DNA of 64,000 bases from Setoptus koraiensis (GCA_048013815.1 CM106585.1:1-64000); one strand, 5' to 3'. Counted from the stretch's first letter, positions 7,480 through 58,535 are shown. Made by a program: numbers and translations. The notes: generated from the letters alone by a model not told the origin.

Positions 7480-8112
7480 AATGATCTAATGATGATTACT
7501 GGGAACCGATGGAAAACATTCGTTGGCAATTCGCGAGTCAAGTTTGACGCGCGCGAAAAAAAAGTAACTTTAAATTTGGCGCTTTTTACACTAGTCAAAC
7601 ACGAAGTTGAGTTGAAAAAACATGTGACTCGATCAAAACATGCGACTCGATGAAAACACGCATCAACCACACTTGATGGTCAGGTAACTAATCTAATTAA
7701 TTAGCCGTTTGTTTATGTTATTTTTCGCCCAGACATACCGGAAATAATACCATATCAAGTGTACTTGTGTGATCTTGTTTAGGACATCGACATTATTGAA
7801 TTAACTTTGCCCATTTATGTGGAATATCTCGTTGAGTCGAGCAACTTTCTACAAAGGATACAGTGGTAAATAGGAGCCGTGTGTGAAATAGATAACCTTT
7901 CATAATGTTTGTTGCTGTGAATATTGGTGCTAGACAATTGTGTCAGCACAAAAGAATATTGCTATCATCATATCAAGCCTCTAATCTATACAGTCAATAT
8001 AACAGATTTACCATTGCCAATCAAAATGTCAATGGCAACTATTCAAGTGTCAGACATCGTAGCACGTTGCCATACAACACTGGCCCAGCTTTTGTTCCAC
8101 AACAGGTAATCA
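7480..8112 (+). repeat. Left arm of ~630-bp inverted duplication (partner 20063-20700)
   Basis: Reverse complement of 20063-20700. About 2 mismatches over 7650-7905, 18 in 201 nt of exon 7905-8105, and more degenerate toward 7480. Confidence 0.95.
7545..7904 (+). promoter_or_regulatory. Putative promoter/5'UTR of LRPPRC (STOML2-derived), with a probable UTR intron at about 7684-7782
   Basis: E2F-like GCGCGAAAAA and TTTGGCGC motifs and repeated GACTCGA motifs, conserved in the STOML2 copy. CAG|GTAACT ... TTGTTTAG| intron signals. Confidence 0.5.
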
Positions 8113-10397
8113 ACAAATTATTATAGATCAACATCTAATCTTGTCTCATGCTATCCACATTGATGAACACAATCTCACCGAATTTCTCTCATCATTACTT
8201 GCTAAATTTTGTTCAAACTCATCAGGATGCCTGGAATGTTAACAAAATGGGCAGAATAGCCAGAGTATTGGAACATAGTCTGACTAATATTAATCATGTA
8301 ACTGTCATGGATCAAAGTACATTAGCGAGTCCGCGAACTCCGGCACGTGCTGCAAACCAAATCGATGAGCTGTCAAAGATCATAAATGATCTAAAGCGAC
8401 AATTGAATTACAATGCCAATACCACCTCCAAAAAGGTCATACAAGCAACAAGGCTTCTAAATGACATCATTGCTACGGGCAACCTAGATGATCTGAGAGC
8501 GAAACTGGGCTCTATTCCCAACTTTGGTGAAGTCCTGCTGGCTTCTTGTAGCTCGCATATGATTTATGAGACACCAGAAAGGCGAGAACACTTGGCTGGT
8601 CGAGTATGGTCATGTATTCAACAAATTTCTCAATTGAGCATTTCCCATTACAATACTTTATTGTTAGTATTTCTTGAAAACAACACCCAATTTGATCCAT
8701 CAAAAATCTTAGAAGACCTCAAGTCAAAGGGACTCACCCCTAACAGAGTGACTCTCCAGAGATTACTGCATAGATACTGCTTGATGGGCGATATGAAACA
8801 AGCCTTGGAAATACTTGAAGATATGAAAGAAAATAATATGGAAATTAATGAGACAGTGTTTGCCTCCCTTTTTATTGGGTACGGAAATATCCAGGATGCA
8901 CAGTCATTATCCGAACTACTTCAGTTGATGAAATCTAGTGGAGTTGAGGCGGGTGATAAATCTTACGCCGCTTATATTTGTGCTCATATCAACTGTGATA
9001 CATCGGATCAAACCATTAAAAATATCCTCGATGAAGCAACTAAAGAATATGATTTATCACCGAATCATTATATTGCAATTTTCACTGCTCTAGTCAAAAA
9101 GAGACCCGACTCGGCCTTAATTGCTGATATTACGCACAGAATTGAAACATCTACCAGAGATTTGTTCGATTATGGAGCCAAATCCAGGATTATCCACACC
9201 CTTATACAGGAGGGTTACTATCAGACGGCATCTTCTATATTTTGGAAAACAAAATTCACTGAGAGGATACTATCGAGTGGTCATTTTGGCAACTCTTACA
9301 TCGAAATTCTTGCCTCTTCGAAACAGGTCCCTGTTGACTTCATCATGCAAGAATGTCGGACCCTCATAGATCGAGACCTCAATATGTCGGCTCTCGAAAG
9401 AATATTTTTTTCGTTAGCAGCAAGTAATGGTAGAGCGGATGTGATAGAGCGAGTACTAGAGGTAATGGATTCGAAAGGCAAGGTTAGGTGTCACTATTAT
9501 TGGCCCTTGCTAGCTCAAGCAACCGACGTTAAAGGACTATTGAGTGTCTTGGAGCGGAAGATTAAACCGGATCAAGATCAGGAAGAACTATTCGATACAT
9601 TTGTAGAAATTGTTTGGCCAAGAATGGATGGTACTTCCTTTGAGGAGAGTTTCCAATCATTGTCTGACTTAAAATTTGATAAGCGTCTGCTATTTTTCTC
9701 TTATCTCGAGCTCGTATCTCGAGGCGATGACGATAGATCATCGAAACTTCAGAATGCAATCGCTACTGCCGAGAAAAAAGTGTTTGAACAAAAACCATTG
9801 AGCAAACAAGAAAATCTTACAGCACAACAACTCATCAGAAAGACGTTACATATTGACACTAAAACGGCCACTGAACTGTACATCACTGTCGCCATCAAAT
9901 TTGGAGTAGTTCAAGGCTCTCTTCAGCTAATGATGGCACTACTCAAAGAGAAAAACAAGGAAGATTTACAGAGAGTTATAGACGCAACTAATCGAATTTC
10001 TGGAGAAAATCAAACGTTGAATGAGTTAGTTATCGCATGTATACGAACTGGACATGTCAAACAAGCGGACAAAATTATCAGATCATCCCCCAACAGAATA
10101 CATACAGAACGCTTGGATAAGTGCGTAGATTATTTTGCCTCACATAAATGGGCCGATTCTTTGAAGAACCTTCTATTGTCTACCAAAGGCCTAAATAATT
10201 TTGACAGGGATAAAGCTTATTATCAGCTCTTTAGCGTTTATGATGACCTAAACCAGGCCAATGAGACCCTCGACCTATGCATTCAAATGCAGGAGGATGG
10301 ATATCAGTTAGGCATCGATTCTGCCACACTTGCGGCTTCCATTTTGGAGAGAAATAATTTGCAGGTACCATTTACCAAAGTTGACATTCAACAATGA
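7905..10397 (+). CDS. LRPPRC: LRPPRC/bicoid stability factor-like mitochondrial PPR protein, chimeric with STOML2 N-terminus; exons 7905-8105 and 8226-10397 (~790 aa)
   Basis: PPR repeats (SHYNTLLLVFLEN; PNRVTLQRLLHRYCLMGD), HYYWPLL motif and C-terminal ...ILERNNLQVPF match LRPPRC as recalled. Donor CAG|GTAATC at 8105/8106 and acceptor TCATCAG|GAT at 8225/8226 are in frame. Confidence 0.85.
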
Positions 10398-10414
10398 TCT
10401 GATGCTCATTTAGA

Positions 10415-57302: not shown

Positions 57303-57635
57303 ATAAATCTTGATTATATTATATATTATTGATTGGAAGAAGAGAAGAACAAGAAAGGTTGGCTCTCGCATTTACAGTGGCCTGCCAATACTAACCCATC
57401 GTCCAGTTACATAATTGTCCATATTTATCTCGAACCCCCCATATCATTTATTTATTACATTGTATTATAGGAATTGAATCGCACCTAAATTTTGCATCGT
57501 CATTATTATTATTCACTCTCAAATATTGCTGTTGCTGCTGCCGACGCTAACATTACTATTACTGCCATAAGTGGAAATATTTATTTATAATTGAACTTAG
57601 TTGAGGAAGCTCACGAAACACACACTATTGCAAAC

Positions 57636-58535
57636 ATGACTCAGTCCTTAGATGAAATCGATCTCAATGATCTCAAAGATCCATCGGGTATCTTTGAACT
57701 AGCTGAGGTAGGTCAACATGTGGCTCAACATCATCATCATACACCTCAAGAGCCTCGTCATCAGCCACCACCTCCACCTCCATTGTCTGAACCCGTGCTC
57801 TCAGGTTCCTCAAGACAGCAAGCGCCTCCGCCAGTACCCATGCACCGTGCACCCCAATCGACTAAACCACCACCACCGACTAAACTCCTACCTCGTGGCT
57901 GGCATACCATACATTTTAGTCAAATCAATGATTTGATTGGATGCCATCTATGCGGTGGTTATCTCATAGATGCCACTACTATCACAGAGTGTTTGCACTC
58001 ATTCTGCCGAAAATGCTTGGTGATCCATCTGCAAAATAGCAGCAATTCATGTCCAAAATGTAGCATCTCTCTTCCTGGAGCTAAACCGTTCGACAACATT
58101 AGGTCCGATCATAGGTTACAGGAAATTGTCTACAAATTGGTGCCAAACCTGTTCACCAATGAGATGAAGAGACGAAAAAAATTTTATAAAAATGCCCCAC
58201 CAGAAGAAAAAAAAAAATTAACTAGCGAACAACGAGGTGCTGTCAGATACGGTCATCCTGTTTATGGACCAAATGATACAGTATTCGTTACACTTGTATC
58301 AACACCGTCCAAGCCAGAGGGAGAGAGAATATATTTAAAGTGTCCTGGCACAGTGTCAGTGGCCACCCTCAAGAAATTTTTAATTTTGAGATATGAGCTG
58401 CAGGCTTTTCATAATATTAATATTCTATACGAGAATGATATACTATCTGATGAGTGTCCAATGATAGATCTGGTATACTTCAATTCCTGGATGCAAACTG
58501 CGCCTCTTTTCTTGCATTTTAAAATTACAATATGA
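57636..58535 (+). CDS. PCGF (BMI1/Psc type) copy 2, with Misshapen/MAP4K4-like N-terminal peptide (299 aa)
   Basis: Same RING + RAWUL as copy 1 (12 aa differences in the first ~140 shared residues). N-terminus MTQSLDEIDLNDLKDPSGIFELAEVG followed by a Pro/His-rich linker. Confidence 0.85.
   Translation: MTQSLDEIDLNDLKDPSGIFELAEVGQHVAQHHHHTPQEPRHQPPPPPPLSEPVLSGSSRQQAPPPVPMHRAPQSTKPPPPTKLLPRGWHTIHFSQINDLIGCHLCGGYLIDATTITECLHSFCRKCLVIHLQNSSNSCPKCSISLPGAKPFDNIRSDHRLQEIVYKLVPNLFTNEMKRRKKFYKNAPPEEKKKLTSEQRGAVRYGHPVYGPNDTVFVTLVSTPSKPEGERIYLKCPGTVSVATLKKFLILRYELQAFHNINILYENDILSDECPMIDLVYFNSWMQTAPLFLHFKITI

What the first reader, a model, noticed from the sequence alone, without database searches (positions are those of the whole stretch)
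7480..58535. Recurrent capture of 5' gene modules: three chimeric genes plus a duplicated promoter in one 64-kb window
Seen: STOML2 upstream region and presequence exon fused to LRPPRC; a calsyntenin exon fragment supplying the 5' end and ATG of PCGF copy 1; a Misshapen-like N-terminus on PCGF copy 2; and a duplicated TATA/Inr block just upstream of the PCGF pair. Two donors lie within 5-12 kb of their recipients. In both of those cases, sequence upstream of the recruited ATG is near-identical to the donor while the translated part is more diverged. Inference: this lineage may routinely build new genes or rewire expression and targeting by local segmental duplication of 5' ends. No transposase or Helitron gene is visible to explain it.
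Basis: partly seen in the sequence, partly recalled or inferred. Interest (0 to 1): 0.8.

Follow-up and report, generated by a model that had tools for sequence, protein, structure and literature searches.

The report
Borrowed gene front ends in a mite
In this small mite genome, three genes (a mitochondrial RNA-binding gene and two Polycomb ring-finger genes) start with front ends copied from other genes; this is a known way of making hybrid genes, unusually dense here, but no RNA data show that the hybrids are expressed.

Summary
All four observations are real. The window comes from an eriophyoid-type mite.

(1) An inverted ~0.8-kb copy of the STOML2 front end heads the LRPPRC-like gene. It holds the upstream region, ATG, 67-codon presequence exon, intron 1 and the start of exon 2. 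A related species (Logan SRR33593474, dS ~0.75) has the same fusion. The copied exon is under purifying selection (omega 0.11). The 268 nt before the ATG are 98.9% identical to the donor, which points to gene conversion.

(2) A 464-nt internal calsyntenin exon piece lies before PCGF1. It supplies the only in-frame ATG (56364) ahead of the RING, and the relative lacks it.

(3) PCGF2 is a young partial duplicate (dS 0.16). Its first 78 codons and 330 nt of upstream flank form a three-piece, in-frame mosaic of the misshapen (msn) kinase gene (E 6e-15 against the relative's msn). The msn donor is not local.

(4) The "TATA/Inr block" copies the neighbouring small gene's upstream block. Its coding start has decayed, and the relative lacks it.

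I read these as two episodes, one old and one young, not four independent captures. No transposon signs were found and no RNA evidence was available. The scan has noted similar front-end captures elsewhere in this genome; I did not test those notes.

The parts
7478..7636 (+). Distal upstream part of the copied STOML2 5' module (71% identical to 20539-20702 minus strand)
7637..7904 (+). Proximal upstream region and leader of the LRPPRC-like gene. It is 98.9% identical (3 mismatches in 268 nt) to the STOML2 upstream region. Read as a recent gene-conversion tract.
7905..8105 (+). LRPPRC-like exon 1, a copy of the 67-codon STOML2 presequence exon (ATG 7905, donor CAG|GTAATC). No acidic residues, 6 K/R.
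   Evidence: 12 synonymous and 6 non-synonymous differences, omega 0.11.
8106..8225 (+). Copied STOML2 intron 1 (70% identical). It carries in-frame stops, so splicing is needed to join exon 1.
8226..10397 (+). LRPPRC-like exon 2. The first ~25 codons (8226-8300) still derive from STOML2 exon 2; the rest is PPR/LRPPRC. The spliced product is 790 aa.
19120..20270 (-). Donor gene STOML2, intact: exon 1 at 20070-20270, intron at 19975-20069, exon 2 at 19120-19974. 351 aa; omega 0.018 against the relative.
20271..20702 (-). STOML2 upstream region, the donor of 7478-7904
50452..50918 (+). Donor piece inside one calsyntenin coding exon (ORF 49959-51308, overlaps the CLSTN_C match)
53921..54275 (+). 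Upstream block of the small gene with ORF 54431-54865. TATA GGTATATAAC at 54024, Inr-like TCAATTAC at 54057, and a short conserved ORF starting at ATG 54152. Conserved in the relative.
54865..55188 (+). Copy of that block. TATA (54970) and Inr (55003) are intact. The ATG has become AAG, there is an in-frame TAA, and a 41-nt deletion removes the donor. Absent from the relative.
55292..55387 (+). The only upstream block of PCGF1 conserved with the relative (GC-rich, E2F-like TTCCGCGC/TCGCGC motifs). Candidate ancestral PCGF1 promoter element.
55954..56417 (+). Inserted copy of the calsyntenin exon piece, in frame with PCGF1. 55961-56358 is 100% identical to the donor; 56359-56417 is ~14% diverged.
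56364..57302 (+). PCGF1 coding sequence (BMI1/Psc type, RING plus RAWUL). The first 18 codons, including the only ATG ahead of the RING, come from the calsyntenin piece. Homology to the relative's orthologue starts at 56418.
57305..57711 (+). msn piece 1: ~330 nt of msn 5' flank and leader plus msn codons 1-25. It starts 3 nt after the PCGF1 stop.
   Evidence: 78% identical to L007:207-622
57710..57778 (+). msn piece 2: linker codons ~346-372 (His/Pro-rich), joined in frame
   Evidence: 81% identical to L007:1589-1655
57789..57877 (+). msn piece 3: linker codons ~497-527 (PxxP-rich), joined in frame
   Evidence: 90% identical to L007:2038-2126; 25 of 26 residues
57636..58535 (+). PCGF2 coding sequence: 78 msn-derived codons followed by the duplicated PCGF core (57871-58532, matching 56577-57296) and a new stop codon

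Best explanation
The window records two separate episodes of DNA-level partial gene duplication. In each, the front of one gene was placed ahead of another.

Episode 1 is old. An inverted ~0.8-kb copy of the STOML2 front end replaced the front of the LRPPRC-like gene 12 kb away. The copy holds about 430 nt of upstream sequence, the leader, the ATG, the 67-codon mitochondrial presequence exon, intron 1 and roughly 25-30 codons of exon 2. One mitochondrial import leader was thereby swapped for another, and the two mitochondrial genes came under near-identical upstream sequence. The fusion predates the split from a related species. It is kept by purifying selection and is repeatedly homogenised with its donor by gene conversion.

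Episode 2 is young and lineage-specific, and it rebuilt the BMI1/Psc-type PCGF locus.
- The 3' 720 nt of the coding sequence were duplicated in tandem.
- The joint was filled with a 570-nt in-frame mosaic of the misshapen (msn) kinase gene taken from another locus. The mosaic holds upstream flank, leader, ATG, 25 codons and two linker pieces; the kinase domain is missing. This gives PCGF2 a new probable promoter, start codon and N-terminus.
- A 464-nt internal calsyntenin exon piece from 5.5 kb upstream replaced the ancestral start region of PCGF1. It now provides the only usable ATG.
- A copy of the neighbouring small gene's TATA/Inr block landed further upstream, and its coding start has since decayed.

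Shown here: the sequence relationships, their ages, the absence from or presence in the relative, the selection on coding parts, and the lack of transposon hallmarks.

Inferred: the joining mechanism (microhomology-mediated end joining or replicative template switching), gene conversion as the cause of the identity mosaics, and actual use of the borrowed promoters and ATGs.
For: Repeat pairs and gene identities.

STOML2 to LRPPRC:
- Exon 1, the splice sites and the start of exon 2 are shared.
- The relative's LRPPRC contig L001 keeps an even longer STOML2-like stretch in exon 2.
- L001 and the relative's STOML2 contig L003 both begin with the same 30-mer inside intron 1. That is what a k=31 graph gives at the end of a collapsed identical repeat.
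- The exon 1 paralogues have dS 0.35, dN 0.039 and omega 0.11. The binomial P is 0.004-0.007 against the model in which one copy evolves neutrally.
- Orthologue dS is 0.75, and LRPPRC omega is 0.17.
- Identity along the pair runs 71 / 98.9 / 91 / 70 / 71%.

PCGF1:
- Homology to the relative's orthologue starts exactly at 56418.
- The relative has no calsyntenin fragment and no second promoter copy.
- 56364 is the only in-frame ATG before the RING.
- Omega against the relative is 0.045.

PCGF2:
- dS to PCGF1 is 0.16, against 0.65 between species, and nearly all dN falls on the PCGF2 branch.
- The duplication boundaries are sharp.
- The msn mosaic scores E 6e-15, aligns in three DNA blocks, and all its joints are in frame.
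- The joints show microhomology: ACAAAAATCT and TAAAC.

No TIR, TSD or hairpin was found.
Against: - No transcript, CAGE or read-level data could be reached, so use of the borrowed promoters and ATGs is inferred.
- PCGF2 could start at the internal ATG 57840, and its omega (0.36-0.7 on its own branch) is also compatible with relaxed constraint.
- The duplicated TATA/Inr block lies 1.36 kb from the PCGF1 ATG and has no demonstrated link to it.
- The msn donor of this genome was not available. Junction microhomologies were therefore judged against the relative's msn as a proxy.
- A single event for episode 2 is suggested only by similar divergences (0.10-0.16) and by proximity.
- Absence of PCGF2 from the relative rests on one short-read graph assembly whose contig ends 243 nt after PCGF1.
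Confidence: 0.7

Rival explanations
1. One reading: this mite lineage routinely makes or rewires genes by copying 5' modules of (mostly nearby) genes onto other genes, at a rate well above that of other animals. On this view the four features are samples of a continuing genome-wide process.
For: There are at least two independent episodes of different age within 64 kb. All four repeat pairs in the window touch gene front ends. Other notes of this scan on the same genome list at least eight further 5'-capture chimeras, some said to be conserved in a second species. Those notes were not tested here.
Against: One window cannot give a rate. Three of the four features may be a single event. In a compact genome most duplications will hit genes. 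One donor piece is not a 5' end and one donor is not local. About 53 kb of contigs from more distant eriophyoid-like mites showed no local repeats, although graph assemblies break at repeats and so are biased against showing them.
Confidence: 0.4
2. The copied pieces around the PCGF pair are inert debris. On this view PCGF1 uses an unseen upstream exon, PCGF2 is a decaying partial duplicate or starts at ATG 57840, and the promoter copy is dead.
For: The coding start of the promoter copy has decayed. PCGF2 has raised dN and a 15-codon deletion. There are no expression data.
Against: PCGF1 is under strong constraint (omega 0.045), and its only ATG before the RING lies in the calsyntenin piece. 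PCGF2 keeps a 299-codon open frame across three in-frame msn joints (about 1 in 27 by chance) and in-frame indels, despite ~15% divergence. The msn flank keeps blocks that are conserved between species.
Confidence: 0.2
3. Transposon-mediated gene-fragment capture (Pack-MULE or Helitron-type transduplication, or recombination at transposons as in Drosophila 'tinkering loci').
For: Fragments from four genes are clustered in 4.6 kb.
Against: No terminal inverted repeats, target-site duplications, hairpins or transposase/RT ORFs flank any piece. The only short inverted pair is a 19-nt AT-rich match.
Confidence: 0.05
4. Assembly or polishing artefact: false joins, retained haplotigs or paralogue over-polishing created the copies and the perfect-identity tracts.
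For: A 398-nt perfectly identical tract lies 5.5 kb from its donor. No reads were available.
Against: Pairs C and D, and the edges of A and B, are 10-30% diverged, which is far beyond allelic variation. The LRPPRC fusion is seen independently in another species' assembly. The insert edges are diverged and in frame.
Confidence: 0.03

Closest known systems
Chimeric genes formed by partial (tandem or dispersed) DNA duplication, as surveyed in Drosophila (e.g. PMC5460883, PMC4069613)
   Same: A partial copy of one gene supplies upstream sequence, 5' UTR, ATG and N-terminal codons to another gene. The parent genes stay intact. The young copy (PCGF2) evolves asymmetrically fast.
   Different: Here one fusion is an inverted copy 12 kb away that is kept similar to its donor by gene conversion. 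Another joint holds a three-piece mosaic of a distant gene. Expression is unproven, whereas the fly cases have RNA-seq support.
Acquisition of mitochondrial presequences by copying or sharing the presequence exon of another nuclear gene (described for plant genes; recalled from general knowledge, not checked here)
   Same: A presequence exon plus its intron from one mitochondrial protein gene is placed in front of another mitochondrial protein's coding body.
   Different: The recipient LRPPRC presumably already had its own presequence, so this is a replacement and not a first acquisition. It occurs in an animal.
Concerted evolution of duplicated segments by gene conversion
   Same: Sharply bounded near-identical tracts lie inside older, 14-30% diverged homology. 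Paralogue dS (0.35) is below orthologue dS (0.75) for a duplication that predates the species split.
   Different: In both local pairs the high-identity tract stops within about 30 nt of the recruited ATG. I have no tested explanation for this.
Replicative template-switch rearrangements (FoSTeS/MMBIR) giving a duplication with templated insertions at the joint (from general knowledge)
   Same: A tandem duplication whose joint carries several short templated pieces from near and far. Microhomology of 2-10 nt is seen at the joints.
   Different: A single origin is not shown. Serial deletions inside a larger msn copy would give the same end state.
'Tinkering loci' of Drosophila (bioRxiv 10.64898/2026.08.09.743762, abstract only read)
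   Same: A small region collects fragments of several unrelated genes and yields composite open reading frames.
   Different: Those loci are tied to transposon sequences and are re-transcribed. Here no transposon sequence was found and transcription is unknown.
Human COMMD3-BMI1 read-through protein (seen among the hits)
   Same: A BMI1-type PCGF gains an N-terminus from an upstream neighbour.
   Different: That case arises by read-through transcription, not by DNA duplication.

Membership tests
Chimeric gene by DNA-level partial duplication | The recipient's 5' segment is paralogous to part of another gene | tested here: met
   Met for STOML2 to LRPPRC, calsyntenin to PCGF1 and msn to PCGF2.
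Chimeric gene by DNA-level partial duplication | The junction keeps one open frame or compatible splice sites | tested here: met
   LRPPRC has a phase-0 donor and acceptor. The PCGF1 ORF runs 56364-57302. PCGF2 has three in-frame msn joints.
Chimeric gene by DNA-level partial duplication | The parent gene is retained intact | tested here: inconclusive
   STOML2 and calsyntenin are intact in the window. This genome's own msn gene could not be reached; only the relative's intact msn was seen.
Chimeric gene by DNA-level partial duplication | The chimeric mRNA or protein is made | not testable with these tools
   No transcript data for this species or the relative. Indirect support comes only from omega 0.11 on the copied exon and the in-frame joints.
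Retrocopy-derived chimera (jingwei type) | Loss of the donor's introns and a poly(A) remnant | tested here: not met
   The STOML2 copy keeps intron 1 and upstream flank. The msn copy includes 330 nt of 5' flank and no poly(A).
Transposon-mediated transduplication | TIRs, TSDs or a Helitron hairpin flanking the captured pieces | tested here: not met
Gene conversion between duplicates | A sharply bounded high-identity tract inside older diverged homology | tested here: met
   Pair A has 3/268 mismatches against 29-30% in the flanks. Pair B has 0/398 against 8/59 plus an indel.
Gene conversion between duplicates | Paralogues within a species are closer than the age of the duplication allows | tested here: met
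   The fusion is shared with the relative, yet exon 1 paralogue dS is 0.35 against orthologue dS of 0.75. In the relative the two copies are collapsed in the assembly graph.
FoSTeS/MMBIR complex rearrangement | Several templated pieces at one joint, with microhomology at each breakpoint, formed in one event | tested here: inconclusive
   There are four joints with microhomology of 2-10 nt, judged against the relative's msn. A single event is not demonstrable.
PCGF (BMI1/Psc-type PRC1 subunit) | N-terminal C3HC4 RING followed by a RAWUL domain | tested here: met
   Both copies match Pfam zf-C3HC4 and RAWUL. BMI1 in the PDB scores E 8e-43.
LRPPRC | A PPR-repeat protein whose best match is LRPPRC over a long stretch | tested here: met
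   Human LRPPRC scores E 5e-48, with query 101-461 aligned to residues 123-479. The mite protein has only 790 aa against 1394.

The most novel reading that the evidence does not exclude
Eriophyoid mites, with their extremely streamlined and intron-poor genomes, have an unusually high, transposon-independent rate of copying promoter-plus-ATG modules onto other genes. On this view front-end swapping is a main route of regulatory and N-terminal innovation in the lineage, and gene conversion keeps the borrowed promoter in step with its donor while the new coding part diverges, giving conversion tracts that end at the ATG.
Probability: 0.3. Interest if true: 0.8.

Novelty: new member of a known kind. 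Interest (0 to 1): 0.6.

Why it matters
Hybrid genes made by partial duplication are a recognised source of new genes, but well-dated examples with known donors are few outside flies, nematodes and plants.

This window offers three of different ages.
- One is an old, conserved swap of a mitochondrial import leader, with a promoter region kept almost identical to that of its donor.
- Two are young remodellings of the Polycomb PCGF gene. One of these puts a ring-finger protein behind the upstream region and SH3-motif-rich linker pieces of a kinase gene.

If the pattern holds across the genome, as other notes of this scan suggest, tiny mite genomes would be a good system for measuring how often promoter capture rescues partial duplicates. 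They would also allow a test of whether gene conversion maintains co-regulation of donor and recipient.

Tried and rejected
- Looked for the msn donor in the window with six-frame kinase motifs; none found.
- Asked whether 57636-57711 is the true first exon of msn with PCGF2 nested in an intron. I rejected this because two further msn linker pieces follow in frame and the relative's msn is one uninterrupted 723-codon ORF in a different neighbourhood.
- Tried to follow the LRPPRC fusion into more distant mites through STOML2 synteny. Those contigs have an intronless STOML2 with other neighbours, so they give no information.
- Tried to align the relative's PCGF1 downstream flank with either window flank; there was no signal above shuffled controls.
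- Looked for remnants of the relative's PCGF1 N-terminus in the window; none found.
- Pfam gave nothing for the small neighbouring gene or for the relative's intergenic ORFs. I could not settle that gene's exon model, because my spliced model hit a stop.
- Rfam found no RNA genes.
- Self-BLAST of relatives' contigs as a baseline is uninformative, because graph assemblies break at repeats.
- The eriophyoid genome papers I read do not mention such chimeras. Species identity stayed unresolved.
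Full report
**What the window is.** Named best hits for the conserved proteins are mites. These are Aceria tosichella for STOML2 and Leptotrombidium and Tetranychus for the PCGF. Genes are dense and introns short, and the scan holds the genome as two pieces. I therefore treat it as an eriophyoid-type mite. The species is not identified, and the published two-chromosome eriophyoid assembly I checked seems too short to be this one. 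The only close relative in the public protein collections is a short-read graph assembly, Logan SRR33593474. From it I fetched four contigs:
- L001: LRPPRC exon 2 plus the destabilase gene.
- L002: the small neighbouring gene plus PCGF1.
- L003: STOML2.
- L007: msn.

Synonymous divergence between the two species is 0.65-0.75.

**The observation.** Pfam and PDB sequence searches confirm the gene names.

**STOML2 to LRPPRC.**
- The segment 7478-8160 is an inverted copy of 20702-20021. It holds about 430 nt of upstream sequence, the ATG (7905), a 67-codon exon ending in CAG|GTAATC, a 120-nt intron with in-frame stops, and an acceptor at 8225/8226.
- The big PPR ORF then opens with a stretch still recognisable as the start of STOML2 exon 2.
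- The conserved stomatin motif spans the splice site, so STOML2 is the donor.
- The 67 residues have no acidic and six basic residues, as a mitochondrial presequence should.
- The relative's LRPPRC ORF keeps an even longer STOML2-like stretch, roughly 30 codons reaching a KINHV motif that matches KISYV in STOML2. The fusion therefore predates the species split.
- L001 and L003 both begin with the same 30 bases inside intron 1 and then diverge. That is the signature of a k=31 graph leaving a collapsed identical repeat, so the relative also has two near-identical copies of the upstream part.
- Identity along the window pair is 71% (distal upstream), 98.9% (268 nt before the ATG), 91% (exon 1), 70% (intron) and 71% (start of exon 2).
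- Exon 1 paralogue dS is 0.35, about half the orthologue dS, although the duplication is older than the split. An old duplication followed by repeated gene conversion is the simplest reading.
- Exon 1 differs by 12 synonymous and 6 non-synonymous changes (omega 0.11). That is unlikely if the LRPPRC-side copy were untranslated (P about 0.004-0.007).
- LRPPRC as a whole has omega 0.17 and STOML2 0.018.
- I conclude that this is a working chimeric gene whose product enters mitochondria on a borrowed leader. Import itself is inferred.

**PCGF1.**
- The relative's orthologue (P0003) aligns from window 56418 onward at 84%, with omega 0.045.
- 56418 is exactly the right end of the 464-nt calsyntenin copy (55954-56417).
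- The relative has 40 unrelated N-terminal codons there. It has no calsyntenin-like sequence anywhere between the small neighbouring gene and PCGF1.
- The donor piece lies inside a single calsyntenin exon, so it is an internal fragment and not a 5' end.
- In the copy, the frame is open into PCGF1. The first in-frame ATG is 56364, an internal Met of calsyntenin, and the next ATG lies beyond the RING. A RING-bearing PCGF1 must therefore start there or use an unseen upstream exon.
- The copy is perfectly identical to its donor over 398 nt (55961-56358). From 5 nt before the ATG to its end it then carries 8 substitutions, three of them synonymous, and a one-codon deletion.

**PCGF2.**
- The duplicated unit is only 56577-57296 against 57871-58532, with sharp boundaries. 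The second copy therefore lacks the parental N-terminus.
- dS between the copies is 0.16 and dN is 0.059. Comparison with the relative puts nearly all the non-synonymous change on PCGF2. PCGF2 is thus a young, fast-evolving, lineage-specific partial duplicate.
- Its 78-codon N-terminus gave a single hit among 1.84 billion representative proteins, at E 6e-15. The hit is the relative's genuine msn/MAP4K4-type kinase.
- Residues 1-25 match msn 1-25 (24 of 25 identical). The next ~23 residues match msn ~346-372, and the last ~28 match msn 497-527 (25 of 26 identical).
- At DNA level, L007:207-622 aligns to window 57305-57711. That stretch covers 340 nt of msn 5' flank and leader and begins three bases after the PCGF1 stop. 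L007:1589-1655 and L007:2038-2126 follow directly.
- The kinase domain is gone, all three internal joints are in frame, and the joints show short microhomologies.
- There is no kinase sequence in the window, and the relative's msn has different neighbours. The donor is therefore elsewhere.
- The open frame has survived ~15% divergence, several in-frame indels and three joints. That argues for selection on the whole chimeric ORF, although a start at 57840 cannot be excluded.

**The TATA/Inr block.**
- The segment 53921-54275 is the upstream block of the small gene whose main ORF is 54431-54865. It has a TATA at 54024, an Inr-like element 33 nt later, and a short ORF start conserved in the relative.
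- The copy begins at that gene's stop codon (54865). It keeps the TATA and Inr, but it has lost the ATG, gained a stop, and lost 41 nt that include the splice donor.
- The relative has one copy only.
- The copy lies 1.36 kb upstream of the PCGF1 ATG. A conserved GC-rich block (55292-55387), the likelier ancestral PCGF1 promoter element, sits between them. Any role of the copy in PCGF1 expression is open.

**How many events.** The LRPPRC fusion is older than the species split. The three PCGF-side changes are all younger: the divergences are 0.10, about 0.15 at the edges of the calsyntenin insert, and 0.16. All three are absent from the relative and lie within 4.6 kb. They may be one complex rearrangement or a short series. 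I found no inverted termini, target duplications or transposase ORFs.

**The wider claim.** Other notes of this scan report further front-end captures in the same genome, among them MRPL14 to IleRS, CCT4 to AsnRS and eIF4A to a secreted protein gene. They raise my prior for a lineage-wide tendency, but I did not test them. The eriophyoid genome papers I searched do not describe such genes. Comparable biology is known from Drosophila tandem duplications (PMC5460883, PMC4069613) and from a recent preprint on 'tinkering loci' (10.64898/2026.08.09.743762).

**Verdict.** These are new, well-resolved examples of a known process. Two details are unusual and open: conversion tracts that stop at the recruited ATG, and a three-piece in-frame kinase-gene mosaic heading a Polycomb gene. 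Expression is the main unknown.

Noticed in passing
window 7637-8124 and 20051-20538: The two 488-nt arms are inverted and 95% alike, and they bracket a 12-kb block holding the LRPPRC body, the destabilase gene, P5CS and the STOML2 body. Recombination between them would invert the block while leaving both genes with an equivalent exon 1. This could be a neutral inversion polymorphism.
   Followed up: no
window 10631-14125 (-): One 1164-codon ORF carries three Destabilase (i-type lysozyme) domains. The relative has the same gene next to LRPPRC (L001:2495-3247).
   Followed up: partly
window 19975-20069 (-); L004-L006: STOML2 here has an intron after codon 67. In more distant eriophyoid-like contigs (72% identical proteins) STOML2 is a single 368-379-codon ORF in a different gene neighbourhood. 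The intron was either gained here or lost there.
   Followed up: partly
window 8226-10397: The LRPPRC-like protein has only 790 aa, against 1394 in human. The best alignment covers human residues 123-479. The protein may be shortened, in line with genome streamlining.
   Followed up: no
window 55292-55387; also 7540-7600 and 20580-20640: E2F-like TTTGGCGC/TTCCGCGC motifs occur in the conserved block upstream of PCGF1 and in the shared STOML2/LRPPRC upstream region.
   Followed up: no
window 41706-41894 and 28003-28170: Long arrays of 9-nt units (GTCGCTAGT and ACAACAACG) lie inside open reading frames. They probably encode low-complexity repeats.
   Followed up: no
window 57730-57870: The msn-derived part of PCGF2 keeps proline-rich PxxP stretches. 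In msn-type kinases these are the adaptor (Nck/Dock SH3) binding region (general knowledge), so a Polycomb ring-finger protein may have gained SH3-binding motifs.
   Followed up: no
window 54152-54865: The small neighbouring gene has a conserved short upstream ORF with a hydrophobic, signal-peptide-like start, and a 144-codon main ORF with no Pfam match. My attempt at a spliced model hit a stop codon, so its structure is unresolved.
   Followed up: partly
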